Source: Asterias rubens (lineage: Eukaryota). From it: a stretch of 64,000 nucleotides of DNA. The translations under genes were made by a program, and so were the position numbers. This document shows, in pieces, positions 17,692 through 64,000 of the stretch. The notes below the pieces were generated by a model. It made no database searches. It saw nothing but the letters and a program-made list of their open reading frames with translations, and was not told where the DNA came from. The stretch spans positions 18,476,001-18,540,000 of the forward strand of contig NC_047064.1 of assembly GCF_902459465.1 (NCBI RefSeq). Direction: 5' to 3'. How positions within the stretch are numbered: the first letter of the stretch is position 1; every line of letters starts with the position of its first letter.

Positions 17692-17937
17692 GTAAGTGAC
17701 TGTTCTCAAGTTTATGTAAACCCAGGGATGTGATTTCTCCCTGTTTTTTCTTGTGTTTTTTTTTTCTTCAGAAATGAAGCTAACATCCTGCATGTCTCTC
17801 CTAATATTCATGCATCATGTCATAATTCTTACCCTACTGAGGTATAGGCGCAAGTCCACCGCCGCTTGCAGTGGCTGTGCCTGTGGCCTCATTGTGGGTT
17901 AGAACTGTGACGTACTCATGCATAAGTGAGGCGTATT

Positions 17938-18387
17938 CAGGGATGCCAGTTTTCCGGCTTTTGCTGGAATTCACGCTTTTTCAAATTTTCCCCCGTTTTT
18001 TTTCCGGCGCTCCGTGTTTCAGCTGGCCGGAAAAAAATTAATTTTTAGAAAAATGATTTACGGCGCTCCGTATTTATCTGGCCGGAGAAAATATATTTTA
18101 AATGAAAACAGAGTTCCGGCGTTTCGTATTTCATCTGGCCGGAGAAAATATGTGCCGTCAACTCGCCGTCATCTCAACCACTACGCAGATGGCAGGTATG
18201 AACTAGCCTTGACCCAAGGTGTTAGCAGTCAATTAAGATAAAGTGCAGTACATACTACACTTGCAGTACCAATCATTGACGCCTTTGGGAAAGACTATTC
18301 CAAATGCAGGAAAGCGCCCTCTGTTACCCCCTCTCATCGCTGCAATTTTTGTTCAGGCTCTGAAAGAAAGAGTCACTGGCATCCCTG
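17938..18387. mobile_element. hAT-like MITE
   Basis: TIRs CAGGGATGCCAGT/ACTGGCATCCCTG; 8-bp TSD GGCGTATT/GGCGTATA; internal CCGGAGAAA subrepeats. Confidence 0.75.
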
Positions 18388-19895
18388 GGCGTATAAAGCC
18401 CCAGGTTGCAGAGGAGGGCTTTTAAAACCAAAGATAAGTGTTAATAATTGGGCTCCGTGCTCGCAAGTTTTCGAGTTCAGTTTTGTTTTTTCAACAGCCT
18501 AACACATCCCTGTAAACCTGACCGTAAGGCCGACCATGTTTTTGCAGTCTTGGATTGCAAGGGATTTTCCTTAACTTTTTTTTTAAACTCGCCTGGCGAA
18601 TGACTCAATTCAATTTTTGGGTTGCACGCAAGATTTTACATGTTTGTAAACTTAAACAACGGTCGCGATTGAGGCCACATTCAATGAAGAACATGCCAAG
18701 ACTTAAGACTTGTCAAACCATTTTACGATCTCTTTGGGATTTTACAACTGTATCCCTCAGTTATTGTGACAAGCAAAACATGTTTTACTCAAGCTGTGAC
18801 TAGTAACACCCATATTATAGACATGGGAGGTGGTGCTTTGTGCATTACCGGCCAGGCTTCGGACTGATGATACCCAAGCCTACATCCGTACAGCCTCTGG
18901 AAAAAATAATTGTAGCCCACACCTTGAAGTGGCCTTCAAGTCTGGCAACTTGCAAAAAAATTTTTTAAAAATAGACGCCGCTTCCACTGTGATGGAAAAG
19001 TGGCCGAGAGCGTGGCCAATCGGGGGCAAAAAGTGGGAGGATCTCCATTAGAGTGGTTTGGTCGGGGTGGGATTTCCTAGGTCGGGAAGTTGCGTTCTCT
19101 CCCCATGCTTATTTTGAACATGCTCAAAATAAGCATAGCCAGTTTGTATCAAACAATAAGAGGGGCAAAGTCGAGTGGGAACGCCATTATCTAAAAAACA
19201 GCATGGTAGCATCCTTGTGAGATCTCTTTGGTCGCAATAAAACGCAGTACTGTCAAGTAGAAACAACCGTTTGGTCGGCATTGGTCTTGTGGTATTCGTA
19301 GTGGTCAGCATAAATTTTGATGTAAAAGCAGTACAGTTGAACAAATAAATGTCTTGAAATTCAAATGTTGTGTCGAGTCTCTAACTTTCCAAATTGCTTA
19401 ACGTTGACGATGATTGTATCCCGACTTGATAACTTTTTGAGATCGGGGTGATAGGCACGGTCTTCGTAAGGTTGCAGAGCTGTGTGAACAGGTCTGACTG
19501 TTTTTAGTCACATTTGGCGACGGGGCGACTGCTAATTTCGAACTTTGATTGCACCGTTGATCCTCACCTCTACAAAGTACAGGCATGATATCCTTCCTAC
19601 TTTGGTTCGTTTTCTGGTTTTTTTTGCCCTTGCATACATGTGTAAATCAGAAAAACATTGTTTTTTTTTGCAGAGATCATTTGTTTCCATTTATGTTCAA
19701 GTACATCTTTAAAGAAACACAGACTAATGAAAGAATAAAACTTTTTAAAGCAGTTTGGTACTTTGATGGAGAACCAGCTAATTTGACTAGACCTACATGT
19801 AAACAAAAGGGCCTTACCATCAACTAGCTACTAAAAGTACATTAAACCAAAAGATTGAAGAAAGATTATTATTATTATCATTATTATTATTATTA

Positions 19896-20705
19896 TAGGT
19901 TTTCTCGGTCAATATCGGAAAATGAGCAGCCAATTTAACCACCAGCCTATTCTATTTCGCACGAAATCCAATGCTACTGAAAAGGGTCATTCGATTTCTT
20001 TTTAAGACTAGTCAAATTTACTTTTACGTCATTCGATTTAACAAAATAATCATTCAATTTAACAATTCATCAAAGCTGCACTCAAATTGGCAGGAGTTTT
20101 TTTGAAGCGTGTGTTTAGTCATTCAATTTCACGCCAACAGATTAATGGTTGGTGAATATTAATAAAAAAAAGAAAAAAAAAAAACTGGAAAAACATAAAT
20201 ATAAAAAAAAACATTCAAGCACATTCAAATATTAGGTCTTGGTCAGTTAACCATTAAATGCCCCCCGAAAAAATAAAGAAGAAAAAACCCTTATGGGGCC
20301 CCAGGTAAAGTCTAATGGAAACATAAAATAAAGAAAGTAAGGTTCGCTTAAATTAAAAGGGAAGGTACAAAACAGTTACCTTTTACAGTTGATCTGTTTA
20401 TTTCTATTTCTTTAGTCGTATACTTATTTGAATCCTCGTTTAGCGAAATTGATTGCCTCTTTACGAAATTGAAAATGATTAAATCAGCGAAATCTCTAGT
20501 CGAACCAGCTTTGCTAAATTGAATGATGATTGTTAGTCATGAAAAAGAATGAGTGTGCTAGCAACTTGAATGCCTCAAAACAAAATTGAATGACCGAATT
20601 CTGAATTTGAATAGCAGTAAAAACCGGAGAGGGAAAATAGCTTTAATTCGAACGCATGAAAATTACATTTGCTGCTCATTTTCCGAAATTGACCAAGAAA
20701 ACCTA
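19896..20705. mobile_element. TIR element with TA flanks
   Basis: TAGGTTTTCTCGGTCAATATCGGAAAATGAGCAGC ... GCTGCTCATTTTCCGAAATTGACCAAGAAAACCTA. Confidence 0.7.
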
Positions 20706-21225
20706 TATTATTATTTATGGTTTATTAAAATCTAACTTGTAGCCAATGGCTAAATTGCATCAGTACAATACAAATTTTCAAAGCAATTAACATTAAGCAA
20801 TGAGCAATTAGAAAGAAATAAATAGTTATCAAAAAGTACTAACCGCATTAAAATACATTGGGAGAACTCAACATAAAGAGAGACTGTCACAAATGTAAAA
20901 CATGTAGATTGCATTAAATTTGTACAATAATAATTTAAAAAACAATTTACATTAAGTTTTGATCAATAAAAAGGAAATGATTAAACAAAACTTGACTTAC
21001 AGGGGGAGTACCCTACATAAAGACAAGGCAGTCACAAATTTAGCAATCAAAAGAACCCATCAAGCAAATGTTATGAGCTCCTTGCACCAAAAAGCTTGTG
21101 AAGCAATTTCCAAAAAAATTGCAACTACAGCACATACATGTTGTTTAAGTGTTTATCTGGCCACCTGGCATGTGGCCCCTCATTTGAGGGCAATATTTTT
21201 TATAAAATGCATATGGTTGGAAAGA

Positions 21226-21435
21226 TGTTTTAAAAGTAGAATACAGTGATCCACACAAATTTGCCTCGAAATTGCGTGGTTTTCCATTTACTGTGCGAAC
21301 TAACACGGTGGGTCATTTAAGGGAGTCAAAAATTTGACTCCCATAAATGGCCGACCGTGTTAGTTGACGAGGTAAAAGGAAAACCGTGCAATTCTGAGGC
21401 ATGTTTGTGTGGATCATTGTATTCTACTTTTACAA
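21226..21435. repeat. Imperfect palindromic (fold-back) element
   Basis: AAAAGTAGAATACAGTGATCCACACAAA ... TTTGTGTGGATCATTGTATTCTACTTTT. Confidence 0.7.
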
Positions 21436-22122
21436 CATCTTTCTACCCATATGCATTTTATAACAAACGGTTACAAACGCTTTTCAAAGACCAACTCGAC
21501 CGATCCAAGGCAACGTGTTCCTTTAGTGTGAATAATGATTGCTTATAAATGTGTTCTAATATTACTTGGAAGACAACTCTTAAATTCTTCCATTAGTACC
21601 AAATCATGCAAGTGATCAAAACTTGACAATGGCTTTTAGGTTGAAATATACATCAGTTGATGCTTTACCATCACAGCATACAAGTCTGCCAAAGGTCTGG
21701 TTTAAAAAAAATAATACCGATGACGTCACCAAAAAAACATCTAAAGATACACTTTTACTAGATGTTTGTGTCAAAGAGTTTATGACAATTGTTTCAAAAT
21801 TGGTAAACATAATCTCCTTCATAACAGCAACATATCTGTGGAGTCTTAGCTTCATGACGTCATCATGTGTCACGTGGTATTGCTTTAAAGGTGCACTTTT
21901 CAAAGCTGTGTGTATGCCAAACCAAAAGTTCGACTGAGGTGAAACTTGGTGTATTGTAAGTCGATGACATTAACTTCTTGAACTCAAAATGATGTCATGA
22001 TGACATCCTCATAATGTTTTGACAATTTTTGCAATTTTGATCATTTAGTACAAATCTTGAGAACAAAGCAAGGTGCATTATTTGTTTTTTATACCAGGCT
22101 TTTACTCCCAGGAACCGAACAC

Positions 22123-22917
22123 CTAGAGTTTGTTCACCGAATTCTTAATGTCTTGTTTTTCATACTCATCTGCTTTCTCTCTCTGTTCTTTCCAGTCATC
22201 AGGCTTGATGTCAATGCCCAAGTCTTCAACTGTTTTTTTGAGTACTTCATATCCTGATTCAATACTTTGAATCTTTTCTTTCAAGTTTTCCATTTTTTTT
22301 AGTTTTTGAATGTCACTGCCTTCAATGTCCAAGCTTTCATCTGCGTCTTCTCCTGGTTTAGACTTTTGCATTTTTCCAATATAATAGTCCAGCATTAAAA
22401 GTGTCACCTTCTTCCATGCAGAACTATCCATGGGTGACAAGGTAATCCTATCATTACCCTTTAACTTGTTGCGGCCGGTTTTATCTGTGAAGGTCTTGGC
22501 AAAGTGAATGTTAAACTCGACCTTGTCATGTTTTTCTATGAATTGTATGATCTTGTCAGCACAGTCACCACACGGGGAGTAGTTGATGTAGAGTGTACAT
22601 GTATACTCAGGTGACTTATTCGCTGACTCAGGTGACTTATTCGCTGAATCAAGGTCAGACTCAAGGTCAGCCTCAAGGTCAGCCTTAAGGTCAGCTTGGA
22701 AAAGAAGCTCAGCATGAAGCTCATTAGGTTTGTTGTAATACATCTTGGGGGTCCCTTCTGGACTTTGCACAATGAGAATGGTTTCCTTGGGCCATTCAAA
22801 CCGGTCCTTGGGCCATTTCCCTTGAGAGTATCCCGACCTGATCATGACAGCAATGTCATGATCAAAAACATGATCAATGTCACGTTCAAAACTGTCAGGC
22901 TCGTATTTGCTTGCCAT
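22123..22917 (-). CDS. DA1: AID/APOBEC-like cytidine deaminase, 264 aa (MASKYEPD...)
   Basis: ELHAE ... LYINYSPCGDC ... FNIHFAKTF. The ATG lies 13 nt after the acceptor tttacag|; the longer ORF-track start is intronic. Confidence 0.9.
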   Translation of the reverse strand: MASKYEPDSFERDIDHVFDHDIAVMIRSGYSQGKWPKDRFEWPKETILIVQSPEGTPKMYYNKPNELHAELLFQADLKADLEADLESDLDSANKSPESANKSPEYTCTLYINYSPCGDCADKIIQFIEKHDKVEFNIHFAKTFTDKTGRNKLKGNDRITLSPMDSSAWKKVTLLMLDYYIGKMQKSKPGEDADESLDIEGSDIQKLKKMENLKEKIQSIESGYEVLKKTVEDLGIDIKPDDWKEQREKADEYEKQDIKNSVNKL

Positions 22918-23220
22918 GCTGATAGAATTTCTGTAAAAATACATAGGAAGTTTCCATGTTAATTCTTTTTGCAATATTAAAGAAACATTCTGCTTTAAAT
23001 TGTATGCAGTTTGTGTGTGATATAATAACCACACTTCACAATGGACCATCTTGTTACCTGAACTCTTAAAATTTGTGCCTCCCTCGTTATAGTAGTTAAA
23101 CTCCCCTCCCCTCCCCCTATTTGGAAATCATTTACCGAAACACATTAATTTATTATTATTTATATTTTTCATTTGTTTACTTATGTATTTATTTATTTAT
23201 TATGATGAATAGGGTAGATG

Positions 23221-23772: not shown

Positions 23773-26118
23773 TTATTTATCACCAGTGTTTATGTTAAGT
23801 CCAAAGGGTTTGACTGTCTTGAGTTGGTGAATCCAGTGTGATTCTCTATGCTTGCGGTGTGTGTCATCACCATTGCAAGCTTCAATCACCAGAAGTTCAA
23901 CATCACTGACACTATGATTGGGGCTGTTGAAGTGGATAGAGACTGGGTACGGTTTCTTAGTCTTTATGGAAGAGACATGATTCGCAAAGCGAAGACTAAG
24001 TTTGGTCTTAGTCTCTCCCACATATTGTAGCCCACATCTCTTACATGATATGACATAGACTACATTACACGTGCTGCATTCAGAGTCGGTCTTGATGTTG
24101 TATGAAGAGCCAGTGGTATGACTCTTCACCTTACATGAGGGCTTAATGTGCAGACACGTTTTGCATTTGGAACGGGTACATTTGTGACAGCCCAGTATAT
24201 CTGTCGGGGGTTGTGTTTGGACTGTACCGGGGGGAATTTTGGCCCTGACTAGTATGTCACCAAGGTTCTTAGGGTGGCGGAATGCAACCATGGGAACCTC
24301 AGTGATTGCTGAGTGTAACCTGCTGGAGGAGTGAAGTATAGGCATGTTATTATTGAGAATTGAGGGAAGTTTGGGTAATTTGGGGTGGAAGGTGGTGACC
24401 AAAGCAACTCTATTGGTAGGAGTTTTTTTAGCTCCCGTGTTAGTCAACAGAGTATGACGAGGTACGTTGAGAGCCCTGTTGATAGCAAGTTGGACCCTAC
24501 GTTCGCTGTGTCCCCTAGATACTAGGTGTTTCCTTAGCTCTGATGAGCGCCTCTTGTACAGGGTATCTGTGGAACAGATACGCCTGATACGTAAGGCCTG
24601 ACTGTAAGCAATTGCCTTCTTACAGTGACTAGGGTGACAGCTATTGGAGAGAAGGTACTGGTGGGTGTCGGTGGGTTTACTGTAAACATCTGTGACAAGG
24701 CCATTAGGAGACTTGGTTATTGTTACATCTAGAAAGTTCACACTGGTGAGAGATTGTTCGGTGGTGAACTTTATGGTGGGGTGAAATGAGTTGATATGGT
24801 CAATAAACTCATCCAAGCTATCTTGGTCACCACACCAGATGGAGAAAATATCATCAATAAATCTCCACCAAACTAGTGGTCGGTTGGGGGCGGAGGACAG
24901 GAGTCTGTCCTCCAACTGAGACATGAATAGGTTAGCATATGAGGGTGCCATTTTGGTACCCATGGCAGTACCCTGTACCTGTAGAAAATGCCTGTCAGAA
25001 AATGTGAAATTATTCTTCATTAGAATGTGGCTCATGAGTTCCTTAATATGACTCACTGAGGGGCGGGACTGATTACTAGCATTGAGGGCAGAGACACATG
25101 CACTCATGCCTTCATGATGGGGTATGTTAGTATACAGTGATGAAACATCAAAAGTAACCAAAATAGCAGAGTCAGGTATTTGGTGCTTGACCTCATCTAG
25201 TTTGTGGAGAAAGTCTTTGGTATCCTTGATGAAGGAAGGAATACGGCAGACTAAGGGTTTGAGGAAGCTATCGACAAACTCAGAAATGCGCTCTGCGGGG
25301 CTACCATTCCCAGATACAATAGGTCTCCCCGGGTTATTGGGCTTGTGTATCTTAGGTAGAAGGTAGAACCTTGCTGTACGGGGGTCATGTGGGAGGAGAT
25401 AGTTAAATGTATCTTTCTCAATATCATTGGCATTATAAATCTTAACCAGGGTATCACTGATATCTTGGGAGAAAGATTCAGTGGGATCAGAAGCACATTC
25501 AATGTAATGGTCAGTGTTACTGAGCTGTCTAAGGCCCTCAGCAATGTAGTCATGTGTGTTCATGACTACAACTGCGGACCCCTTGTCAGCCCGTTTAATC
25601 ACTATGTCTGGTGATTGGCAGAGTTGTGTAAGGGCGTGACGCTCATCTTGGGGGAGGTTATTGGGAGTAGGGGTACTGGGGGCCTTAAGAACCTCGGAGT
25701 TAACCGAATTGATGTATGTCTCTAGAGCCACATCTCGGTTCTTAGGGGGTACCCAAGTACTCTTTTCCCCGAAGCGGTTGCGGGGAATAGGTTGGGTCTC
25801 CACAGATGACTCGTCATCCATGGAGGGCTCTACATGAAAGTATTCACGTAGGCGTAACCTACGATTGAACTGGGCCATGTCCTGTTGGAAAAGAAGTTGG
25901 TTAGGCTCTCTGGGTGTGGGGCAAAACTTAAGACCCCTTGAGAGGAGTTTAACCTGTGGGTCAGTAAGGACCATGTCAGACAGGTTAACTACAGTATTGG
26001 TCTCTGGCAACCTAACAGTAGGAGGAGCAATGGTGGCTCTCTTACTGTGGAAACGTCTATGGGTGTGTTTCTTATGGTTAGCCAGGACATTCATACGTTT
26101 CTTGTTCTGTTTGTCCAT
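23773..26118 (-). CDS. Penelope-like reverse transcriptase / GIY-YIG endonuclease, 781 aa
   Basis: RT motifs FDVSSLYTNIP, QGTAMGTKMAP, WRFIDDIF; GIY-YIG NVVYVISCKRCGLQYVGET...RF..H...E; no stops or frameshifts. Confidence 0.95.
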   Translation of the reverse strand: MDKQNKKRMNVLANHKKHTHRRFHSKRATIAPPTVRLPETNTVVNLSDMVLTDPQVKLLSRGLKFCPTPREPNQLLFQQDMAQFNRRLRLREYFHVEPSMDDESSVETQPIPRNRFGEKSTWVPPKNRDVALETYINSVNSEVLKAPSTPTPNNLPQDERHALTQLCQSPDIVIKRADKGSAVVVMNTHDYIAEGLRQLSNTDHYIECASDPTESFSQDISDTLVKIYNANDIEKDTFNYLLPHDPRTARFYLLPKIHKPNNPGRPIVSGNGSPAERISEFVDSFLKPLVCRIPSFIKDTKDFLHKLDEVKHQIPDSAILVTFDVSSLYTNIPHHEGMSACVSALNASNQSRPSVSHIKELMSHILMKNNFTFSDRHFLQVQGTAMGTKMAPSYANLFMSQLEDRLLSSAPNRPLVWWRFIDDIFSIWCGDQDSLDEFIDHINSFHPTIKFTTEQSLTSVNFLDVTITKSPNGLVTDVYSKPTDTHQYLLSNSCHPSHCKKAIAYSQALRIRRICSTDTLYKRRSSELRKHLVSRGHSERRVQLAINRALNVPRHTLLTNTGAKKTPTNRVALVTTFHPKLPKLPSILNNNMPILHSSSRLHSAITEVPMVAFRHPKNLGDILVRAKIPPGTVQTQPPTDILGCHKCTRSKCKTCLHIKPSCKVKSHTTGSSYNIKTDSECSTCNVVYVISCKRCGLQYVGETKTKLSLRFANHVSSIKTKKPYPVSIHFNSPNHSVSDVELLVIEACNGDDTHRKHRESHWIHQLKTVKPFGLNINTGDK

Positions 26119-31418: not shown

Positions 31419-32390
31419 CTAAGAATATAGTAGATCGAAACTCGATCGTCCAGACCCATTAGCCAGCCAGTATTCCTCAAAAGGTGTTAGTTTTAGGGTA
31501 TCATCAAGTATTTCATCCTGAACCTCGTCTTCGTCCTCGCTCACTTCTTCAGGCCAGTATTCCTCAAAATATTCTTCAGGCCAGTATTCCTCAAAATATT
31601 CTTCAGGCCAGTATTCCTCAAAATATTCTTCAGGCCAGTATTCCTCAAAATATTCTTCAGGCCAGTATTCCTCAAAATATTCTTCAGGCCAGTATTCCTC
31701 AAAATATTCTTCTTCTTCAAAGATATCATGAAGTATTTGATCATGCACCTCGTCTGCTTCCTTTCTCATGGTTATCCATTTAGGAAATCTTTCAATGTCC
31801 AAGTATTTGAGTGCCGTATTCAATGACTCATATCCTGGCTTAGATCGAACCTCTTCCTGCAATTTTTGCATTTTTTGTATGTGAATGTCCAGTAATGATG
31901 TTGTCACAGACTTCCAATTGCTATCACTCATGGTTGACAAGGTAATCCCCTCTTGATACTTTAACTTTCGGAGGCCGTCTCCATCCTTGTAGGTCATGGC
32001 ATAGTGGATGTTAAATATAACCAAAGGATGGTTGTTTATGAATTCTATGATCCGGTCAGCACAATCAACACATGGCGAGTAGTTGATGTAGAGGTCGTAT
32101 TCGGTTTTCTGCTGGCGCATGCGCATCTTGGAAAAGTAGTCTTCAAGTGATAAAGATTGATCGGCTGACTCTATTTCATCTAGGAATGCACACTCGACAT
32201 GTTGTGCTCTTCCGTTTATGTGCTTTGGTTTGCTGTGGTTAATCTCGTTCAGTCTGTTACTTTGAACTACAAGAATGGCCTCCTGTGGCCATTTATATCG
32301 ATCTGATTCCACATGACGCCAATCCCGTACGCCCGTTCTGATCATGATTTCAATGTCATCTTCACAACTGTGCGGACTGCTTCTTGCCAT
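31419..32390 (-). CDS. DA2: AID/APOBEC-like deaminase, 323 aa, with (EEYWPEEYF)-repeat tail
   Basis: QHVECAF ... LYINYSPCVDC ... HYAMTY. The ATG lies 10 nt after the acceptor ttacag|. Confidence 0.9.
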   Translation of the reverse strand: MARSSPHSCEDDIEIMIRTGVRDWRHVESDRYKWPQEAILVVQSNRLNEINHSKPKHINGRAQHVECAFLDEIESADQSLSLEDYFSKMRMRQQKTEYDLYINYSPCVDCADRIIEFINNHPLVIFNIHYAMTYKDGDGLRKLKYQEGITLSTMSDSNWKSVTTSLLDIHIQKMQKLQEEVRSKPGYESLNTALKYLDIERFPKWITMRKEADEVHDQILHDIFEEEEYFEEYWPEEYFEEYWPEEYFEEYWPEEYFEEYWPEEYFEEYWPEEYFEEYWPEEVSEDEDEVQDEILDDTLKLTPFEEYWLANGSGRSSFDLLYS

Positions 32391-38751: not shown

Positions 38752-39480
38752 CTAAGTCCTTCCACAAATAGCCTTGAACATCTTTAGCATCATTATAAAC
38801 TTTTCATTGTCTTCATAGATTTGTTCAAGTACTTCTTCTTCAGTCTCGTCCGATTTCTCTCTCATTCGTATCCATCCAGGAGATGTTTCAATACCCAAGT
38901 AAGCGACTGCGATCGCTAATGACTCGTATCCCGACTTGCACCGAAGAAGTGTTTTCTTTGATTTTTTTCTGTGAAATTTTAGAATTGATGTTAACACAGC
39001 CTTCCATGTGTCACCAGTCATGGTTGCCAAGGCAATGCGGTCTCGGTTTATTAACATTCGGATGCCGTCTCCACCCTTGTAGGTCATGGCATAGTGGATG
39101 TGAAATGCAACAGAAGGGTGGTTGTTTATGAATCTTATGATCCGGTCAGCACAATCAACACATGGCGAATAGTTGATGAAGAGGTCGTATTCAGTCATCT
39201 TCTGGGGCATGCACATCCTGGAAAAGTTGTCTTCAAATGATAAAGACCAGTCTGCACACTCGAGGTCATCTAGGAAAGCACACTCGGCATGTTGTGACGG
39301 GGATTTTTTCGTTTTTCTTCTGCTGTGAAAAATCCTTTCCGTTCTGTCACTTTGAACGACGAGAATGGCTTCATGCGGCCATTTATACCGCTTGGATGTC
39401 TTGCGGCGTGGATCCTGTACGCCCGTTCTGATCATGATTTCAATGTCATCTTCACAACTGCGAGGCGCGTTGGTTGCCAT
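38752..39480 (-). CDS. DA3: AID/APOBEC-like deaminase, 242 aa
   Basis: QHAECAF ... LFINYSPCVDC. The ATG lies 12 nt after a poly-T tract and acceptor. Confidence 0.9.
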   Translation of the reverse strand: MATNAPRSCEDDIEIMIRTGVQDPRRKTSKRYKWPHEAILVVQSDRTERIFHSRRKTKKSPSQHAECAFLDDLECADWSLSFEDNFSRMCMPQKMTEYDLFINYSPCVDCADRIIRFINNHPSVAFHIHYAMTYKGGDGIRMLINRDRIALATMTGDTWKAVLTSILKFHRKKSKKTLLRCKSGYESLAIAVAYLGIETSPGWIRMREKSDETEEEVLEQIYEDNEKFIMMLKMFKAICGRT

Positions 39481-40588: not shown

Positions 40589-40720
40589 AAGTTATGGATG
40601 TTTAGGTGGTTCAGTTGATCTGTGTAGAAAAGCCTGTGAATGCTTTTTGTGGACTTGCATCTAAGGCGGTCTCTTTTTGTAAGTTGTAGACAGTGCATTC
40701 AAGGAATATGCGTACATTGG
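40589..40720 (-). other. Putative non-coding first exon of DA3
   Basis: Donor TT|GTAAGTAC; perfect TATAAATA at 40743-40750. Confidence 0.6.
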
Positions 40721-43378: not shown

Positions 43379-44632
43379 TTAATCATCAAAACCTACATCA
43401 TCATAACCTTCTTCGGCGCCGTAACCTTTCTCTAAGTAATCATAACCCCCCTCATAGTAGCCGTAACCACTCCCGTATTGTCGATAACCTCTCCCATAGT
43501 GTCTATAACCAACCTTATATGGGCGATAAGCTCTCCCATACTGGCCAACGGCAACCCCATATGGCCGATGACCTCTCCTGAAGCGAACATCACTTTCCCA
43601 ATCATCATAACCTCCCTCATCATCGTAATACCCTTCCTCATCGTCACAACTTTCCTCCCCATCACAATTTTCCTCCTTGTCACAGCTGTCCTCCCTGTCA
43701 CAACCTTCCCCATCAGAATCTTCCCAACAATTGTAATAGTCCCAATCATCATAACCTTCCTCATCATCGTAATACCCTTCCTCATCGTCACAACTTTCCT
43801 CATCGTCACAATTTTCTTCGTCGTCACATTTGCCCTTCCCGTCACAACCTTCCTCCCCGTCACAACCTTCCTCATCATAACCTTCCCATTCATCATAACA
43901 CTCCTTATATTTTTTCTCATCGTTACAGCCTTCCTTGAGGTCACAAACTTCCTCATTGATTGTTTGAAGGTTTTTTTTTTCATTCTTGTCTGATTTCTCT
44001 CTCCATATAATCCATCCAGGGGAGCTTTCAATGCCCAAGTCTTCAACTGTTATCTGTAATGACTTGTACCCAGAATTATCCTGAAACTTTTGTTTCAACT
44101 TTAGCAGTTTGTGTATGTGAATGTCCAGAAATGATAATACCACAGCATGCCAATTGTAATCATTCATGGTTGCCAAGGTAATCCTGTCTTGATTCTTTAA
44201 TTTTCTGAGACCGCCACCATCCTGGTAGGTCATGGCATAGTGGATGTGAAATTCAACAGAAGGATGGTTATTGATGAACTGTATGATCCGGTCAGCACAA
44301 TCAACACATGGCGAGTAGTTGATGTACAGTTCGTATTTAGTCATCTGCTGGGACAAGCTCAGGATCTGGGAAATCAGGTCGTCCAATGATAAAGACTGAT
44401 CTGCTGACTCAAGGTCTTCCAGGAATGCACACTCTGCGTGTTGTGCTCCTCCAATGGGCATTGATTTCGGAGTGCTGTGGTAAATCTTGTTCAGTCTGTC
44501 ACTTTGAACTAAAAGAATGGCCTCCCGTGGCCATCTATATCGCTTTGATGTCCTATGACGCCAATCCCATACGCCCGTTCTGATCATGATTTCAATGTCA
44601 TATCCACAACTGTACGGACTGCTTCTTGCCAT
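43379..44632 (-). CDS. DA4: AID/APOBEC-like deaminase, 417 aa, with acidic D/E-C-G-Y and R/G/Y-rich tail
   Basis: QHAECAF ... LYINYSPCVDC; acceptor 13 nt upstream of the ATG. Confidence 0.9.
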   Translation of the reverse strand: MARSSPYSCGYDIEIMIRTGVWDWRHRTSKRYRWPREAILLVQSDRLNKIYHSTPKSMPIGGAQHAECAFLEDLESADQSLSLDDLISQILSLSQQMTKYELYINYSPCVDCADRIIQFINNHPSVEFHIHYAMTYQDGGGLRKLKNQDRITLATMNDYNWHAVVLSFLDIHIHKLLKLKQKFQDNSGYKSLQITVEDLGIESSPGWIIWREKSDKNEKKNLQTINEEVCDLKEGCNDEKKYKECYDEWEGYDEEGCDGEEGCDGKGKCDDEENCDDEESCDDEEGYYDDEEGYDDWDYYNCWEDSDGEGCDREDSCDKEENCDGEESCDDEEGYYDDEGGYDDWESDVRFRRGHRPYGVAVGQYGRAYRPYKVGYRHYGRGYRQYGSGYGYYEGGYDYLEKGYGAEEGYDDVGFDD

Positions 44633-48133: not shown

Positions 48134-48793
48134 CTATTCCCTTAGAATTTTTGCAAGTATTTCATTTTCAGTCTTGTCTGCATTCTCGCGCCACCATTTC
48201 CATTTATCAGAGTCTTTAATTAGGTCTAAGTGTTTAACTACTTTTGTTATTGACTCATACCCTGAATTATCCCGGCGAATAATCTCCAAAACTGGGATTT
48301 CTTTTTTGTGAAAGTCTAGAATTGCTGTTATCACAGACTGCCATTTACCACTATTCATGGTTGCCAAGGTTATGCGCTCTTGATGCATTAGCATTCTGAG
48401 GCCATCTCCGCCATCCTTGTATAACATGGCATAGTGGATGTGAAATTCAACAAAAGGTTGGTCGTTTATGAATCTTACTATTCGATCTGCACAATCAACA
48501 CATGGCGAGTTATTGATGTAGAGTTCATATTTGGTCATCTGCTGGAACATCAGAGGAACAGAGTCTTTGAATTCTGAGTTCCAACCACCAGACTCGACAA
48601 GCTTGAGATCATCTAGGAAGGCATCCTCGGCATGTTTTGGTGTATTTCCTCTTCTCAGTCTGCTGTGATAAATCTCCCTCAGTTTGGTACTTTGAACTAT
48701 AAGAATTGTTTTCTTTTCTTGTGAAGTTTGTTGTCCTTGGCTAAGCATGTTTTCAATGTTCTCTGTCCAATTGCTCTGCACGTTTCCTGCCAT
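48134..48793 (-). CDS. DA5: AID/APOBEC-like deaminase, 219 aa, short loop 1, no tail
   Basis: KHAEDAF ... LYINNSPCVDC; acceptor 13 nt upstream of the ATG. Confidence 0.88.
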   Translation of the reverse strand: MAGNVQSNWTENIENMLSQGQQTSQEKKTILIVQSTKLREIYHSRLRRGNTPKHAEDAFLDDLKLVESGGWNSEFKDSVPLMFQQMTKYELYINNSPCVDCADRIVRFINDQPFVEFHIHYAMLYKDGGDGLRMLMHQERITLATMNSGKWQSVITAILDFHKKEIPVLEIIRRDNSGYESITKVVKHLDLIKDSDKWKWWRENADKTENEILAKILRE

Positions 48794-49738: not shown

Positions 49739-49749
49739 TCTTTCCTATG

Positions 49750-50502
49750 GGACATCTGTGTCAAATCAACCAGTTTTTCATCAGAATGATTGGATGTGGC
49801 TCAAATGAACACATACAAAAAAGCTAAGTCATACTCCATGTCGTTTTCGAGATATGACCCATTGAAATTTGGTCAAGGCGGCCATTTTGTACTCGCGCGA
49901 GACGCGAAAAGTGATTTTTGTGATAATTTCCGACTTTGAAAGCTCATAATTTAGTTATTGTACCAGGTAGAGAGCTCAAATTTGGTATTCCATCTTACTT
50001 CTTGCCAAATTTCATGAATCTGCACTCAATTTAAGAGTACATGTATCTCATTTAATTTTCTAGTTATGGTCACCTAAAGTAGGCACTTTAATCAGCCGAA
50101 AGTGTTTTTTGTGATAATTGGGGTCACCCTGTGCCCACATGAGGGGTCAAATGAAACCTATATTCCCTAGTTATTATCTATGGGTGCATGTCTTTACCCA
50201 TAAGCAATTATAAGCTCACCAATGCATTCATTCAGAAATAGCATGGACCCAAAGTTGGTTCCTGCCAGAAAAAGGTAAAAAAGACCCCGCCCGTCTTGAC
50301 CCCGGTTGACCCCGCGATCAATTGAAACATTTTTTGAAATTGATACCAGTTAAACATATATATTATATCTACTTATACACCAATTTTCAGCTTTGGCACT
50401 CAACTCCTTCATTGTGTGGTGGCACATCCAATCATTCTGATGAAGTTTCATCAAAATCTGAGGGGGTCACCTGGGGACCACTGGTTGATTTGACACGGAA
50501 TG
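49750..50502. mobile_element. TIR element inserted immediately upstream of the DA5 kB site
   Basis: TGTGTCAAATCAACCAG ... CTGGTTGATTTGACACGG; absent from the homologous DA6 upstream region. Confidence 0.6.
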
Positions 50503-52544: not shown

Positions 52545-53372
52545 TTGAAACGTAAGCGTAGTTGCAAATCTTGAAACGTAAGCCTAGCTTGACTCGGGAT
52601 TGAAAGCGTTATTTTTTATTATAGCGTAACAAATCTAAAAAATGTATATGGATTGTATAGTAGCTGCATAGCTTGGAACGTAACCATATCTTTTGGAACG
52701 TAAGCATATCTTGAAACGTAAGCGTAGCTAGGTATCTTGGAACGTAAACGCAGCTGCGTATGGAGCGTAAGCGTAACTTGACTCAGGATTGAAGCGTACC
52801 TTTTGTAAATATAGCGTAACTTGAGAAGGAACGTAAGCAAAAACTTGGAATGTAGGCGTATCTTGGAACGTCATATCTTGGAAGGTAAGCGTAGCTGGAT
52901 ATCTTGGAACGTAAACATAGCTGCGTATGGAACGTAAGCGTAACTTGACTCAGGATTGAAAGCGTACCTTTTGTTATTATAGCGTAACTTGACGAAACGT
53001 AAGAGTATCTTGTAATGTAAGCATAGCTGAGAAGCTGTGTAGCTTCGTAACCTTATGTTTTGGAACGTAAGCATATCTTGGAACGTAAGCGTAGCTAGGT
53101 ATCTTGGAACGTAAACGTAGCTGCGTATGGAAGGTATACGTAACTTGACTCAGGATTGAAAGCATACCTTTTGTAATTACAGCATTACTTGAGAAGGAAG
53201 GTAAGCAAAAACTTGGAATGTAAGTGTAGCTTGATATCTTGCAACGTAAACATAGCTGCATATGGAACGTAAGCGTAGCTTGACTCGGCTTGAAAACGTA
53301 CCTTTTGACATTATAGCGTAACTTGAAGGAACGCAAGCGTAGCTGAGTAGCTGCGTAGCTTGGAACGTAACC
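52545..53372. repeat. Degenerate GGAACGTAAGCGTAGCT-type tandem array with higher-order units
   Basis: Directly visible; no coherent ORF. Confidence 0.8.
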
Positions 53373-56300: not shown

Positions 56301-58118
56301 GAATGGGGCCTTAGATTCTAAAATCGTGTACACCTCATTGGAAACAAAGCAAACAATATTCAACAGTTATAGCAACCAATCATTAAATATTTTTATTTTC
56401 AATACAATTTTGCAGAAATTGACTTTGTCGTTCAAGTCCATACCAACTGGCGCGTTTTTTTATATTTTTATCTGCTGTATACCAGAACTTCTTCGAAGCT
56501 TCCTTTTCAGTCAGATAAACTCCGCGGCTATTAGTGGCTGTGATTATGAGTTTGTTTTAAAAGAGGATACCACTTTCATACAAGCCTTTTTAGTCGGATT
56601 TCTTCTCTGCTATTACTATTAGCAGCGGTGATAATTGTTGAGGGGGGAGACCAGACTTAGACCACTCAAATCCGTGGCTATCGGTGACTATGGATTTGTT
56701 GCTAAGGGTACCAAATACCACTGCTGATTCCACATTCAGCGTGATATACATTGTCCGATTGGCCCATCTCCATATAAATTAACCAAAACTGGATGTACAG
56801 ACCCTCAAAATAACAAGGCAAATGTTTTACAAAGTTCGTAACTATAATGAAAGCAGTTTGGGCGGGACTCAGGATGTACATTATGCCAAGTGTAACTGAA
56901 TTATACCAAATGTGCTCAACACAATAAAATAAGTGTGTCATTGGAGCAGTGTATGTGCTATATTTTTAGTCGTCTAAGCATTATTACCCTTACAGTCATC
57001 TTAGCTGGGAAATACTCAGTGCAGTGGATAAAATTGACACAATGACAAAAGCCCATTGAATTTAAACTATGCGTAAAAGAGGCGAAACATAATCCACATT
57101 ACGGATAATGCGTTGGCCCACTCGATCAACACTAAAATATTACGAAATACCCTACATATCATGCCAAGTACCATCATTGCCAAGTATACCCATCCCCAAT
57201 ATTAAAGCTCAACTCCAGAAACAAACACCAATTCCTTTAGTTGGAGACTGCAAGAGAGAAGGTGAGGAGAGGAGGCGATGCGTCGCGACATTTTACAACT
57301 AAGTTGTGCACGCTCAACAATTAATTTTTATCAAAATACAACATTAATGACAAATTTCCATACCGATCATAAATACAATTTCTTATCCAATACTACGAAA
57401 TGATTATTACCTGTAAGAATACCTCCCTTGCCCCCACATTATCTTTTACAACATGTGTATACTAGAATCCTCCTCATCTAGCGGGGTGCCGCGCGCCCGC
57501 TAGTTTCTATTAAAGCCATTGGACCCTTTCGTTAAACAGTGTTGTCCTAAGGCCCACACTTCGTGTATCACAACTTATATATAAAATAACAAACCTGTGA
57601 AAATTTAGGCTCAATCGGTCATCGGAGTCGGGAGAAAATAATGGGAAACCCACCCTTTTATCCGCATTTTCGCCGCGTCATGACATGTGTTAAAATAAAT
57701 CCGTAATTCTCGACATCGAGAGTTTATATTGTTTTACTGTTTTCTCAAAAAGTAAAGCATTTCATGGAATAATATTTAAAGAGAAGTCTTTCACCACTAC
57801 CTTCTGTAAACCCTGAAAGTTATTTGTAAATACGGAACTTTTTTCTTTTCTTCCTGTACCGAAAGGGTCCAATGGCTTTAAAGCCTACACCATGTGTACA
57901 TGTGCAGTAGGTCAGCACTTGTGTAATGCAATAAAATATTCCTACTTATTTCCAGCGGACCAAATATCTTGCCAGAAACAATTAAGTTGCCCCTTCTTAA
58001 AATTGTCACACCTTATAAAATGTGTGTTTGAGATTGTGCAGGCCATGCAAAAAAAAGTTGTGTTTGAGATACATGTCATAGTCCATGATTTCAGATTATA
58101 CACAATTGCATGGCAGTA

Positions 58119-60107: not shown

Positions 60108-61505
60108 CTACTTTTTTGAAGGTCTCAAAGTCTCGGTCTCGGACCCTCCGGTCTTGGTCTCGAGTTGCCGGGTCTTGGTTTTGGTCTCAACTTGAGGAGT
60201 CTTAGTCTTGGTTTTGGTCTTGGGCTTGGTCTTGGGCTTGGTCGCGACTTCCTGTGCCTTGGTCTTAGTTTTGGTTTTAACTTGTCGAGTCTTGGTCTTG
60301 GTCTCGACTTGCTGTGTCTTGTTCTTGTTTGTGGTCTTGGTCTTGGTCTTGGTCTTGGTCTTGGAAACAACAACGGCAGGGGGCAGAGCAGGAAAGGGGG
60401 AAGGGCAGGGTAGTGGGATGGTCAGGGTAGGGGTAAGAGCAGGGTAGGGGGAAGAACAGGGCAATGGGAGGAGCAGGGCAGGGGGGAGAGCAAGGCAGGT
60501 GGAAGAGGAGGGGAGGGGAAAAAGCAGGGTAGGGGGTAGAGCAGAGGAGGGAGAAGAGCAGGGGAGTGGGAACAGCAGGGCAGGTGGCAGAGCAAGGCGG
60601 GTGGAAGAGGAGGGTAAGGGGAAGAGCAGGGAAGGGGGAAGAGCAGGGTAGGGGGCTGATGTTGTAATAAGGGGGAAGAGCAGAGCAAGGGGAAGGGCAG
60701 GGTAGGGAGCAGAGAAGGGCAAGGGGCAGAGCGGGGCAGTGGGACAGGGCTGTCTTTTTCCCCGTCCAGATCTTGATGTCCTCAATCCAGACTTGCCTTG
60801 GGCCCCCTCACTCTCATTGTACAATTCCCTTTGTATTTTTGCAAGTGTTTCTTTTGCAGTCTTGTCTGCTTCCTCTCTCCATACTATCCATTCCTTAGAG
60901 TCCTCAATGTCGTAGTGTTTGACTATTTTCGCTAATGACTTGTTCCCCGACTTATCACAACGATTTTGTTTCAAAATTTTGATAGTTGGTCTGCAAATGT
61001 CTAGAGTTGCTGTTATCACAGACTGCCATGTATCGCTATTCATGGTTGCCAAGGTTATGCCCCTTTGATGCGTTAACTTTCTGAGGCCATCTCCGCCATC
61101 CTTGTATAACATGGCATAGTGGATGTGAAATTCAACGGAAGGTTGGTTGCTTATGAATCTTACGATTCGGTCCGCGCAATCAACACATGGTGAGTAGTTG
61201 ATGTACAGTTCGTATTCCGTCATCTGCCGGGACATCGGAAGAACAGAGTCTTTGAACTCTGAGTTCCAACCACCAGACTCATCCGACTCGAGTTCATCTA
61301 GGAAGGCGCACTCGGCATGTTGTGCTGGCTTTCTTTGCCTCAGTCTGCTGTGATAAATCTTCTTCTGTTTGGTACTTTGAACTATGAGAATGGTTTTCTT
61401 TTGCCATAAATATTTTTTTTCCTTTAAATGTCTTGGGTCCTGTACGCCTGTTCTAAGTATGATTGCAGCGTCCTCTTTCCATCGGTTGTCCACACAGCTT
61501 ACCAT
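60108..61505 (-). CDS. DA6: AID/APOBEC-like deaminase, 465 aa, with Pro-rich and Lys/Thr-rich repeat-derived tail
   Basis: QHAECAF ... LYINYSPCVDC; acceptor 13 nt upstream of the ATG; the ORF stays open through two repeat elements. Confidence 0.85.
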   Translation of the reverse strand: MVSCVDNRWKEDAAIILRTGVQDPRHLKEKKYLWQKKTILIVQSTKQKKIYHSRLRQRKPAQHAECAFLDELESDESGGWNSEFKDSVLPMSRQMTEYELYINYSPCVDCADRIVRFISNQPSVEFHIHYAMLYKDGGDGLRKLTHQRGITLATMNSDTWQSVITATLDICRPTIKILKQNRCDKSGNKSLAKIVKHYDIEDSKEWIVWREEADKTAKETLAKIQRELYNESEGAQGKSGLRTSRSGRGKRQPCPTAPLCPLPFSAPYPALPLALLFPLITTSAPYPALPPSLLFPLPSSSTRLALPPALLFPLPCSSPSSALPPTLLFPLPSSSTCLALPPALLLPLPCSSPYPALTPTLTIPLPCPSPFPALPPAVVVSKTKTKTKTKTTNKNKTQQVETKTKTRQVKTKTKTKAQEVATKPKTKPKTKTKTKTPQVETKTKTRQLETKTGGSETETLRPSKK

Positions 61506-61911: not shown

Positions 61912-61985
61912 AATTTGTAGATGGTTGGTTCTGCCAGTTGGTCTTTAAGCTTGCCTTTTGTTTAAGTTTAAATTAAAAAAATTGT
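61912..61985 (-). other. Putative non-coding first exon of DA6
   Basis: Donor TT|GTAAGTAC at the homologous position. Confidence 0.55.
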
Positions 61986-62077
61986 GGCTTACACTGAAGA
62001 AAGCATGAGCAATTTATGCAACAATTTATGTCATATATGTAGACTATGGACCATGCACTTGGCAATAGAAATGGAGG

Positions 62078-62105
62078 TATTGCAAGCCAGCTGAGGGAAA
62101 GCCCC
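62078..62105 (-). promoter_or_regulatory. DA6 kB + C/EBP-like module
   Basis: TATTGCAA ... GGGAAAGCCCC. Confidence 0.65.
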
Positions 62106-63302
62106 TTTCTATCATGTCTATCTTGGTAAAAGAGGAAATGACACATTTTGCAAAGCATTTTGCTCTGCTATACATGTGTACAAGGGAAACATGGTCACTG
62201 CTTAATCAAAAAGAAGCTGAGCACCCACCCAGTGGCGCAGTAGGTTAAAGACATTGGACACTATTGGTAATTGTCAAAGACCAGTCTTCTCACTTGGTGT
62301 ATCTCGACATATGCATAAAATAACAAACTTGTGAAAATTTGAGCTCAATCGGTCATCAAAGTTGCAAGATAGTAATGAAAGAAAAAACACGCTTGTCACA
62401 CAAATTGTTGTGCTTCCAGATGCTTGATTTTGAGACCTCAACTCTAAATTTGAGGTCCCGAAATCAAATTCATGGAAAAGTACTTCTTTCTCGAAAACTA
62501 CTCCACTTCAGAGGGAGCCATTTCTCACAATGTTGTACGCTATTAATGTCTCCCCATTACTCATTACCAAGTAAGGTTTTGTGCTGATAATATTGTTGAG
62601 TAATTACATTACATAGTGGGCCATCCAACCCCCCCCCCCCCCCCCCCCCCCCGGAAGTTGTTACTTACTTTTGATTTGTTGAAATTGAACAGGAAACAAC
62701 TAAAGGAAACAACTAAAGGAAAGACAAGAGGCTTTAAGTCTGATTTACAATTTATTTTGCTCTTAAAAAAAATCTGACAAATTGAGATTAAACTAAGCTC
62801 GAAATTTCTATTATCTTGTACTCAATAAAATATTCCTACTTTTTTTTCCCCAACAGACAACAGACCAAATTTAATGCCTGGAACATATTCAGATTTGTAA
62901 AACATGTCTTGAGGTTTTGCTGGCCATGAAAATAAAATGTTGTGTTTGCGATGTGTGTGTCAAATAAAGTTTCTTTATTAAAATCCTTATTAAAATCCTC
63001 CACTCTTTGTTCATGACATACACACAAACAAATTGAGGAATAGTAATTGAAATGATGAAAATATCAATAAATAATAAGTATCTATCGCACAATTAAACAT
63101 AACTATATTATCGCTAACAGAAGAGGGATTGCCCCGGTGTTTCTGGCAGTGGTTACTTATGGATGTACTGTGCCATTTATTAACTGTTCAGTGGGTCTCA
63201 TAATCAGAATCGAGAAAATGTCCCAAGTATTTATGAATCACTACATTCTACGACTCCTAAAGCAACAACAAAACAAACTCCAGACTGATTTGTGATTCAG
63301 AC

Positions 63303-64000
63303 CTACACGTATGTAAGAAATAACCTAATAATAATAATAATAATAATAATAATAAGACTTGTAATGCGCACATATCCACCCTGCTGGGTGTTCAAGGCGT
63401 TCTCCTCGTCATGAGAACTCTCCCCTTCCTCTTCCTCAGAACTTTCCTCCCCCTCCTCCTCCTCCCCCTCCCCCTCCTCCTCCTCTTCCTCACTTGAGTT
63501 CCTCAATCCAGATTCAACTTGGGCTCCCAATATCTCCTCATACCCTTCCCTTTGTATGTTAGCAAGTTTTTCTTGTTCAGTCTTGTCGTCATTCTCTCTC
63601 CACCATGTCCATTTATCAGAGTTTTTAATTATGTTTAAGTATTTAACTACTTTTGCTAATGACTCATACCCTGAATTATTCCGACGAATTTTCTCCAAAA
63701 CTGGGATTTTTTTTTGGTGAAAGTCTAGAATTGCTGTTATCACAGACTGCCATTTACCACTATTCATGGTTGCCAAGGTTATGCGCTGTTGATGCGTTAG
63801 CATTCTGAGGCCATCTCCGCCATCCTTGTATAACATGGCATAGTGGATGTGAAATTGAACAGAAGGGTGGATAATTATGAACTGTATGATTCGTTGTGCA
63901 CAATCAACACATGGCGAGTTATTGATGTAGAGTTCGTATTTTTTCATCAGAGGAACAGAGTCTTCAAATTCTAAGTTCCAACCACCAGACTCGTCCGACT
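63303..64000 (-). CDS. DA7: AID/APOBEC-like deaminase, 5'-partial at the window edge, poly-Glu tail
   Basis: Frame open from the window edge (SDESGGWNLEFEDSVPLMKKYELYINNSPCVDC...); very similar to DA5. The HxE motif lies outside the window. Confidence 0.85.
   Translation of the reverse strand, partial: SDESGGWNLEFEDSVPLMKKYELYINNSPCVDCAQRIIQFIIIHPSVQFHIHYAMLYKDGGDGLRMLTHQQRITLATMNSGKWQSVITAILDFHQKKIPVLEKIRRNNSGYESLAKVVKYLNIIKNSDKWTWWRENDDKTEQEKLANIQREGYEEILGAQVESGLRNSSEEEEEEGEGEEEEGEESSEEEEGESSHDEENALNTQQGGYVRITSLIIIIIIIIIRLFLTYV

What the first reader, a model, noticed from the sequence alone, without database searches (positions are those of the whole stretch)
17692..64000. ATIC stops at a splice donor after 366 codons: the deaminase array appears nested antisense in a >46-kb intron
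Seen: ATIC introns 1-9 are each under 1.6 kb, but after the perfect donor at 17692 I could find no exon for the remaining ~225 aa (RTLFGL, KYTQSNS, SRIHC and SSDAFFP motifs) in 46 kb. Established: ATIC is an essential housekeeping enzyme and the missing part completes the AICAR transformylase domain. Inference: either a mutator-gene cluster expanded inside a housekeeping gene's intron on the opposite strand, producing convergent transcription, or this is a truncated ATIC duplicate or a mis-assembly. From memory, human APOBEC4 is similarly nested antisense in RGL1; that recollection needs verifying.
Basis: partly seen in the sequence, partly recalled or inferred. Interest (0 to 1): 0.78.

Follow-up and report, generated by a model that had tools for sequence, protein, structure and literature searches.

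The report
Deaminase gene array inside ATIC intron
In the starfish Asterias rubens, seven DNA/RNA-editing deaminase genes most likely sit backwards inside one very long intron of the purine-synthesis gene ATIC; genes nested like this are known elsewhere, so it is a tidy example that corrects a split public gene model, not a new kind of system.

Summary
The window is Asterias rubens LR699094.1:18476001-18540000. It carries ATIC exons 1-10: 366 codons, introns of 509-1580 nt, and a GTAAGT donor at 17692. None of exons 11-16 is present on either strand. The control search found all ten 5' exons.

The nested-intron reading is supported. In the sister species A. amurensis I rebuilt the RefSeq ATIC (592 aa, 16 exons) exactly. 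Its intron 10 is 33,630 nt and the other introns are 365-2938 nt. That intron holds all six deaminase ORFs on the opposite strand. The two loci are colinear up to the window's end, which places A. rubens exon 11 about 3 kb beyond it and makes the intron about 49 kb. An A. rubens gene call with the missing transformylase part lies downstream on the same strand. Exons 1-10 are under strong purifying selection (pN/pS 0.057). A decaying duplicate or a mis-assembly is therefore unlikely.

One point stays open. Public A. rubens gene calls split ATIC into 414-aa and 260-aa models. RNA contig lengths suggest a truncated transcript that ends at an A-rich poly(A) site near 20.2 kb. I could not show the exon 10-11 junction in A. 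rubens RNA.

Gene clusters nested in introns are already known, so this is a new member of a known kind.

The parts
6704..6725 (+). ATIC exon 1 (ATG, MAASGEI, phase-1 end)
   Evidence: 100% to A. amurensis exon 1
8306..8432 (+). ATIC exon 2
9886..9962 (+). ATIC exon 3
10767..10833 (+). ATIC exon 4
11515..11603 (+). ATIC exon 5
12113..12191 (+). ATIC exon 6
13475..13547 (+). ATIC exon 7
14289..14676 (+). ATIC exon 8 (388 nt), present in spliced RNA contigs
16104..16189 (+). ATIC exon 9
17602..17691 (+). ATIC exon 10, last ATIC exon in the window, ends at codon 366 in phase 0
17692..64000 (+). First 46,309 nt of ATIC intron 10 (donor GTAAGT at 17692-17697). The acceptor and exons 11-16 lie beyond the window, predicted about 3 kb past its end
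19346..19348 (+). Stop codon (TAA) that ends the public 414-aa 5' ATIC gene call. The 48 extra residues need at least two weak-site exons in 17.8-19.35 kb
20161..20211 (+). AATAAA plus the only A-rich cluster (A8/A12/A9) in this part of the intron; candidate intronic poly(A) site of a truncated ATIC transcript
   Evidence: inference from contig length
22123..22917 (-). Deaminase DA1 (264 aa called product)
23773..26118 (-). Penelope-like retroelement ORF (RT + GIY-YIG), also antisense to ATIC
31419..32390 (-). Deaminase DA2 (323 aa called product, P0272); no ortholog in A. amurensis
38752..39480 (-). Deaminase DA3 (242 aa)
40640..40677 (+). ATG and first exon of the public 260-aa 3' ATIC gene call (AICARFT domain), which runs on past 54632; probably a filler exon
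43379..44632 (-). Deaminase DA4 (417 aa)
48134..48793 (-). Deaminase DA5 (219 aa from MAGNVQS)
60108..61505 (-). Deaminase DA6 (465-aa ORF)
63303..64000 (-). Deaminase DA7, C-terminal two thirds; the open frame runs off the window end

Best explanation
The window holds the 5' ten exons of the single, functional ATIC gene of Asterias rubens and most of its intron 10. A lineage-specific tandem array of AID/APOBEC-like deaminase genes has grown inside that intron, together with a Penelope-like retroelement and satellites. All of these are in the orientation opposite to ATIC. The intron has swollen from the 0.4-3 kb typical of this gene to about 34 kb in A. amurensis and about 49 kb in A. rubens (at least 46.3 kb shown). 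Exons 11-16, which complete the AICAR transformylase domain, lie just beyond the window on the same strand. RNA polymerase must transcribe ATIC through the whole array, and the spliceosome joins exon 10 to exon 11 across it. Because the nested genes are antisense, their splice and poly(A) signals are not read in the ATIC transcript. At least five of the seven deaminase genes were already in the intron before the two Asterias species split. Shown: the exon map, the absence of 3' exons in the window, the complete nested structure in A. amurensis, colinearity, and purifying selection. Inferred: the position of A. rubens exon 11, and that the exon 10-11 splice is used in A. rubens.
For: Window placed at LR699094.1:18476001-18540000 by a 100% match of L001. 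Exon map and 364/366 identity to A. amurensis ATIC. No 3' exon in the window, with a positive control. The A. amurensis gene was rebuilt exactly as 16 exons and 1779 nt, with intron 10 of 33,630 nt against 365-2938 nt for the others; deaminase ORFs lie at L003 18128-44412, all on the minus strand inside intron 10. Colinear synteny runs from upstream of ATIC to DA7 at the window's last base, and exon 11 follows 3,027 nt later in A. amurensis. The A. rubens gene call of 260 aa with PF01808 lies on the + strand from 40640 to beyond 54632. pN/pS of exons 1-10 is 0.057, with pS of 0.042 equal to the intron divergence of 0.042-0.050. Spliced RNA contigs in four runs hold exon 8 with exact exon borders and continue 1003 nt (A. 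rubens) or 1190 nt (A. amurensis) past exon 10; depth is zero at 17900-18267 in the two A. rubens runs, so there is no simple read-through. DA3-DA7 pair 1:1 with A. amurensis ORFs at 85-97% identity and with bootstrap support of 94-100 for DA3-DA6 (DA7 is paired by position and identity), against 45-65% identity between most paralogs and 79% for DA5/DA7.
Against: A. rubens exons 11-16 were never seen directly, because no tool could read beyond base 64000. No full-length A. rubens ATIC protein is in the 90% cluster of the A. amurensis protein, and the public A. rubens calls split the gene into 414-aa and 260-aa models. The 2224-nt A. rubens RNA contig fits a full-length mRNA (681 nt of CDS plus a 322-nt UTR). 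It fits equally well, or better, a truncated transcript that ends at the A-rich site near 20.2 kb. RNA runs hold 28-42% of the words of 17700-22000. The A. amurensis model is a RefSeq prediction, and I did not see its junction reads.
Confidence: 0.85

Rival explanations
1. As well as, or in some tissues instead of, the long-range splice, A. rubens ATIC transcripts end inside intron 10. Exon 10 would be spliced to weak cryptic exons in 17.8-19.35 kb and polyadenylated at AATAAA 20161 and the A-rich cluster. This mRNA would encode a 414-aa protein with an intact IMP cyclohydrolase domain and a broken transformylase domain. This adds to the nested layout and does not replace it.
For: The public 5' gene call is 414 aa and stops at 19348. 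The A. rubens contig has 1003 nt beyond exon 10. If it follows the 414-aa model it ends at 20204, inside the only A8/A12/A9 cluster of the 2.8-kb region; the chance expectation is about 2%. Run X2 holds 28% of the words of 17700-22000, close to the 22% such a terminal exon would give plus scattered intronic cover.
Against: All candidate splice sites for the extra 48 residues are weak. The stretch 19200-19400 is poorly conserved, with 30 gap positions against A. amurensis. The extra peptide has no homolog, and paired 414-aa and 260-aa models are what a predictor makes when it splits one gene at a long intron. The RNA words could instead come from the DA1 3' UTR on the other strand. The A. amurensis contigs show no matching feature.
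Confidence: 0.5
2. The window holds a truncated ATIC duplicate or pseudogene, and the working ATIC gene lies elsewhere.
For: The window alone shows only 366 of 592 codons. NCBI names the A. amurensis protein 'ATIC-like'.
Against: Only 2 nonsynonymous differences against 11 synonymous ones to A. amurensis, pN/pS 0.057. All splice sites are intact. The exons occur in spliced RNA contigs. The ortholog is a complete 16-exon gene. Only one Asterias ATIC appeared among the top profile hits. A 3' half with PF01808 lies downstream on the same strand.
Confidence: 0.03
3. An assembly error placed the deaminase array between the two halves of ATIC.
For: Tandem arrays and repeats are prone to mis-joins, and the public models split the gene here.
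Against: Two chromosome-scale assemblies from different species have the same order and orientation, with 86-98% identical colinear blocks across both junctions. DNA-type runs hold 52-65% of the words of 17700-22000, the stretch that starts at the exon 10 donor.
Confidence: 0.03

Closest known systems
[quoted passage not shown]
   Same: A family of paralogous genes sits within one intron of an unrelated, conserved host gene. The host intron is greatly enlarged, and the arrangement is kept across species.
   Different: Here the nested family is a fast-evolving immune-type mutator family and the host is a core metabolic enzyme. All members are antisense to the host. Conservation is shown only between two congeneric sea stars.
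Human APOBEC4 within RGL1
   Same: An AID/APOBEC-family gene lies inside an intron of an unrelated host gene.
   Different: That case is a single conserved gene, not a tandem array. Only the co-location is supported here, by RGL1-intronic SNPs paired with APOBEC4 (PMC9137810). The antisense orientation is from memory.
Lineage-specific tandem expansions of classical invertebrate AID/APOBEC-like deaminases (Krishnan et al. 2018, PMC5889660)
   Same: Echinoderm deaminases of this family occur as same-region paralog clusters with copy gain and loss. This matches DA1-DA7, the missing DA2 ortholog and the replaced DA1.
   Different: That paper, and Liu et al. 2018 (PMC5956068), say nothing about residence in a host-gene intron or about ATIC.
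[quoted passage not shown]
   Same: Opposite strand, coding sequence in one exon, and located in a long intron.
   Different: Seven paralogs rather than one gene.

Membership tests
ATIC / PurH bifunctional AICAR transformylase-IMP cyclohydrolase | N-terminal MGS-like IMP cyclohydrolase domain and the start of the AICARFT domain, with high identity to known ATIC | tested here: met
   Exon 8 matches PDB ATIC chains at E=5e-56. The 366 residues are 364/366 identical to XP_071788214.1, which carries PF02142 and PF01808.
ATIC / PurH bifunctional AICAR transformylase-IMP cyclohydrolase | A complete AICARFT domain (residues 367-592) encoded by the same gene | tested here: inconclusive
   Absent from the window. 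Present in the A. amurensis ortholog. Implied for A. rubens by a downstream 260-aa call with PF01808 on the same strand. The sequence itself was not seen.
Nested (intronic) antisense gene arrangement | Nested genes lie wholly between two consecutive host exons | tested here: met
   Met in A. amurensis: deaminase ORFs at L003 18128-44412 lie between exon 10 (ends 13264) and exon 11 (starts 46895). In A. rubens the 5' boundary is shown and the 3' boundary is inferred from colinearity.
Nested (intronic) antisense gene arrangement | Nested genes are on the strand opposite to the host | tested here: met
   All seven deaminase ORFs and the Penelope-like ORF are on the minus strand; ATIC is on the plus strand.
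Nested (intronic) antisense gene arrangement | The host mRNA is spliced across the nested genes | tested here: inconclusive
   The RefSeq A. amurensis model was reproduced exactly. The A. amurensis RNA contigs are long enough, with 1190 nt past exon 10. No exon 10-11 junction read was seen, and the A. rubens contig is ambiguous.
AID/APOBEC-like deaminases (classical invertebrate clade) | H[AV]E ... PCxxC zinc-binding motif and a Pfam AID/APOBEC family match above the cut-off | tested here: met
   The motif is present in DA1-DA6; the DA7 part inside the window holds PCVDC. Pfam SNAD4, NAD1 and APOBEC_N score 47-64 bits against cut-offs of 25-27. Precomputed hits give PF18785 Inv-AAD.
AID/APOBEC-like deaminases (classical invertebrate clade) | Cytidine deaminase activity on DNA or RNA | not testable with these tools
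   Needs an enzyme assay.

The most novel reading that the evidence does not exclude
The nested array affects its host gene. In A. rubens the enlarged intron 10 would cause frequent premature polyadenylation of ATIC, giving the 414-aa form. A second transcription unit starting near the DA3 promoter at about 40.6 kb would feed exons 11-16. Head-on transcription during immune induction of the deaminases would then lower full-length ATIC and so de novo purine supply, coupling antiviral mutator expression to nucleotide metabolism. A related idea is that constant ATIC transcription exposes the array to extra mutation. My test did not support that: divergence in intron 10 is 4.2% against 5.0% in introns 1-9, and C/T versus A/G differences are 165 against 144.
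Probability: 0.1. Interest if true: 0.65.

Novelty: new member of a known kind. Interest (0 to 1): 0.4.

Why it matters
It settles what looked like a broken essential gene. ATIC is most likely whole, with one intron enlarged more than tenfold by a mutator-gene array. It shows that the public A. rubens gene calls probably split ATIC in two, which matters for anyone who uses that annotation for metabolic or orthology work. It gives a dated anchor, before the A. rubens/A. amurensis split, and a fixed genomic address for studying how an echinoderm AID/APOBEC-like family expands. It also offers a natural system for asking whether seven inducible antisense genes interfere with a housekeeping host gene.

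Tried and rejected
1. Exact look-ups of DA6 (465 aa), DA7 (214 aa), DA5 (219 aa) and P0273 to walk beyond base 64000 were all 'not on record'. I therefore never read A. rubens DNA past the window.
2. The first homolog search, with an insect ATIC representative, returned only insects. A first mixed alignment misplaced three exon peptides. The trimmed alignment A2 then recovered the A. amurensis ATIC.
3. The loose-end and joint tables from read laying were swamped by high-copy intronic repeats at 13.5-13.85 and 16.8-17.35 kb. The junction at 17691 was not listed.
4. Earlier-findings searches gave nothing on ATIC or the neighbouring window.
5. Cluster look-ups of fragmentary ATIC representatives found no echinoderm, so the array's arrival could not be dated beyond Asterias.
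6. A missed exon in 17.7-22 kb is rejected.
7. Self-mutation of the array is rejected: there is no excess divergence or strand asymmetry.
8. I looked for a splice donor after 'REGYE' in DA7 to explain the shorter ENA protein P0274 and found none.
9. A literature search for ATIC + APOBEC + nested gene returned no paper.
Full report
**Where the window is.** A deaminase protein encoded in the window (P0272) is on record on Asterias rubens chromosome record LR699094.1 (GCA_902459465.3). The fetched locus L001 matches window 42390-21419 at 100% identity. The window is therefore LR699094.1:18476001-18540000 on the record's + strand. The nearest named relatives of the deaminases and of ATIC come from Asterias amurensis.

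**The observation.** A full-length ATIC representative (P0001) and then the A. amurensis ATIC (P0276 = XP_071788214.1, 592 aa) were mapped on the window.
- Ten exons on the + strand give 1098 nt, or 366 codons. Their coordinates are in the parts list.
- Every intron is GT..AG. Introns 1-9 measure 509-1580 nt.
- Exon 10 ends in phase 0 at 17691 and is followed by GTAAGT.
- Exon 8 matches solved ATIC structures at E=5e-56.
- The 366 residues differ from A. amurensis ATIC at two positions.

For residues 367-592 nothing better than E=1.3 exists on either strand. A. amurensis exons 11-16 give only 12-18-nt chance or low-complexity matches. The same nucleotide search recovers all ten 5' exons at 98-100%, including the 22-nt exon 1.

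Seven AID/APOBEC-like ORFs lie on the minus strand from 22.1 kb to the window's end. A Penelope-like ORF (reverse transcriptase plus GIY-YIG) lies on the same strand. The last deaminase, DA7, runs off the window.

**What the sister species shows.** Looking up P0276 returned the whole A. amurensis gene (L003, CP134956.1:5296125-5352641).
- I rebuilt 16 coding exons that translate exactly to the RefSeq protein (1779 nt).
- Intron 10 is 33,630 nt. All other introns are 365-2938 nt.
- Three annotated deaminase genes and two further intact deaminase ORFs occupy L003 18128-44412. All are on the strand opposite to ATIC and all lie inside intron 10.
- The two species are colinear from upstream of ATIC, through exons 1-10, DA3, DA4, DA5 and DA6, to DA7. 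DA7 aligns to the last 860 bases of the window (L003 43002-43868 = window 63139-64000).
- Exon 11 follows 3,027 nt later in A. amurensis.

By colinearity, A. rubens exon 11 should lie about 3 kb past the window, which makes intron 10 about 49 kb. The extra length in A. rubens comes from three segments of roughly 6.4, 2.8 and 7.3 kb. They hold DA2, the Penelope-like element, satellites and a 7.8-kb insertion without ORFs at 49.7-57.5 kb.

**A. rubens itself.** The gene calls on record for this chromosome contain a 260-aa product with the AICARFT Pfam domain. It starts at ATG 40640 on the + strand and runs beyond 54632. The window has no ATIC-coding sequence after 17691, so that model's ATIC exons must lie beyond base 64000, on the same strand and chromosome as exons 1-10. 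A second call of 414 aa covers the 5' exons and stops at 19348. No full-length A. rubens ATIC sits in the 90% cluster of the A. amurensis protein. The public calls therefore split the gene. I read the two models as two halves of one gene, each padded with filler exons. The 48 extra residues need at least two exons with weak splice sites. They have no homolog. They fall in a stretch with 30 gap positions against A. amurensis.

**Is the 5' half functional?** Between the two species exons 1-10 show 11 synonymous and 2 nonsynonymous differences. pS is 0.042, equal to the intron divergence of 0.042-0.050. pN is 0.0024, so pN/pS is 0.057. A decaying truncated copy would not look like this.

**RNA.** Four RNA runs hold the exons. 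Organism B carries the A. amurensis exon-8 differences and so is that species or a very close one.

Contigs of 2224 nt (A. rubens, no mismatch in exon 8), 2400 nt and 1661 nt (A. amurensis) contain exon 8 with borders at the splice sites. They extend 1003 or 1190 nt beyond exon 10. The equal downstream length in X3 and X4 fixes how the coordinates are read. Depth over exon 10 equals the contig depth. Depth is zero at 17900-18267 in the two A. rubens runs, so transcripts leave the genome at the donor and do not read through.

For A. amurensis, 1190 nt equals 681 nt of exons 11-16 plus a 509-nt UTR that ends at a repeat boundary. No alternative end feature fits.

For A. rubens the 1003 nt is ambiguous:
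- It fits 681 nt of coding sequence plus a 322-nt UTR.
- If the contig follows the 414-aa model instead, it ends at 20204. That point lies inside the only A8/A12/A9 cluster of the region, just after AATAAA at 20161. Chance would give this about 2% of the time.
- RNA runs also hold 28-42% of the words of 17700-22000. A roughly 1-kb terminal exon would explain this, and so would a DA1 3' UTR on the other strand.

No more reads could be laid, so I could not resolve this. I rate a truncated, intronically polyadenylated ATIC isoform in A. rubens at about even odds. It would add to the nested structure and would not replace it.

**History of the array.** In a tree of the deaminase domains, DA3, DA4, DA5 and DA6 each pair with an A. 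amurensis ORF at 89-97% identity, with support of 94-100. DA7 pairs with its positional counterpart at 85% identity, though that fork is unresolved in the tree. Most paralogs are 45-65% identical (DA5/DA7 79%). At least five copies were therefore in the intron before the species split. DA2 has no A. amurensis counterpart. The first array position holds unrelated members in the two species, at 20% identity.

**Mechanism.**
- Shown: the layout.
- Inferred: ATIC polymerase crosses seven antisense genes, and splicing removes about 49 kb.
- Also inferred: antisense orientation keeps the nested genes' signals out of the host transcript. This fits the general bias of nested genes to the opposite strand (PMC3192792).
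- Speculative: transcriptional interference with the host gene.
- Not supported: extra mutation in the array. Divergence is 4.2% in intron 10 against 5.0% in introns 1-9, and there is no C/T versus A/G asymmetry.

**Comparison with what is known.** Paralog clusters nested in one host intron are known, for example the TipE cluster in CG18675 and the GMC oxidoreductases in flotillin-2 (PMC3240667). Tandem, lineage-specific expansion of echinoderm AID/APOBEC-like genes is also known (PMC5889660). Neither that paper nor Liu et al. 2018 mentions ATIC or intronic residence, and no paper joined the three terms. The finding is a new member of a known kind and has a practical consequence for annotation.

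**Verdict.** Observation confirmed. The nested-intron reading is supported at about 0.85. The duplicate and mis-assembly readings are each about 0.03. The use of the long-range splice in A. rubens RNA remains to be shown directly.

Noticed in passing
window 6704-19348 and 40640 to beyond 54632 (+): The public gene calls on the A. rubens chromosome split ATIC into a 414-aa 5' model (stop at 19348) and a 260-aa 3' model (ATG at 40640). A. amurensis has one 592-aa model. This is probably an annotation error caused by the roughly 49-kb intron.
   Followed up: partly
window 20161-20211 (+): AATAAA followed by A8, A12 and A9 runs, specific to A. rubens. The end of a 2224-nt RNA contig falls here if the contig follows the 414-aa model. 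This is a possible intronic poly(A) site.
   Followed up: partly
window 18296-18499: A 205-nt RNA contig with no mismatch, and depth in all four runs of 0.15-1.3 times the ATIC exon depth, in a stretch 95-100% identical to A. amurensis. It contains a TATAAAG. It could be an unassigned small transcript or intron-derived RNA.
   Followed up: no
window 17716-17899: RNA contig depth of about 3100 in run X1 but about 18 in run X2. This could be an abundant repeat-derived or small RNA just inside intron 10. The X1 ATIC contig breaks 29 nt after exon 10, as a k=31 assembly graph would at a shared sequence.
   Followed up: no
window 12405-12449 (-): Rfam histone 3' stem-loop match (35.4 bits, cut-off 34) in ATIC intron 6. 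It lies inside an inverted repeat, with no histone ORF nearby, so it is probably a repeat-borne remnant.
   Followed up: partly
window 23773-26118 (-): An intact 781-aa Penelope-like ORF (RT + GIY-YIG) between DA1 and DA2. It has no counterpart at the orthologous place in A. amurensis, so it may be a recent insertion.
   Followed up: partly
window 22123-22917 (-) versus L003 18128-19252: The first array member differs between species. DA1 and the 374-aa A. amurensis gene at the same position share only 20% identity, and the DNA of 19.7-22.9 kb barely aligns.
   Followed up: partly
window 43379-44632 and 48134-48793 (-): Between the two species the deaminase domains of DA4 and DA5 have pN/pS of about 1.0 and 0.6 (DA3 0.17, DA6 0.33), against 0.057 for ATIC. 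The counts are small (15-34 differences).
   Followed up: partly
window 49748-57504: A 7.8-kb segment between DA5 and DA6 corresponds to only 0.4 kb in A. amurensis. It has no ORF over 119 aa and only short tandem repeats.
   Followed up: no
L003 39378-40742 and 43108-44412 (-): The A. amurensis orthologs of DA6 and DA7 are intact ORFs of 455 and 435 aa but are not among the called genes. The orthologs of DA5 and DA4 are fused into one 578-aa model.
   Followed up: no
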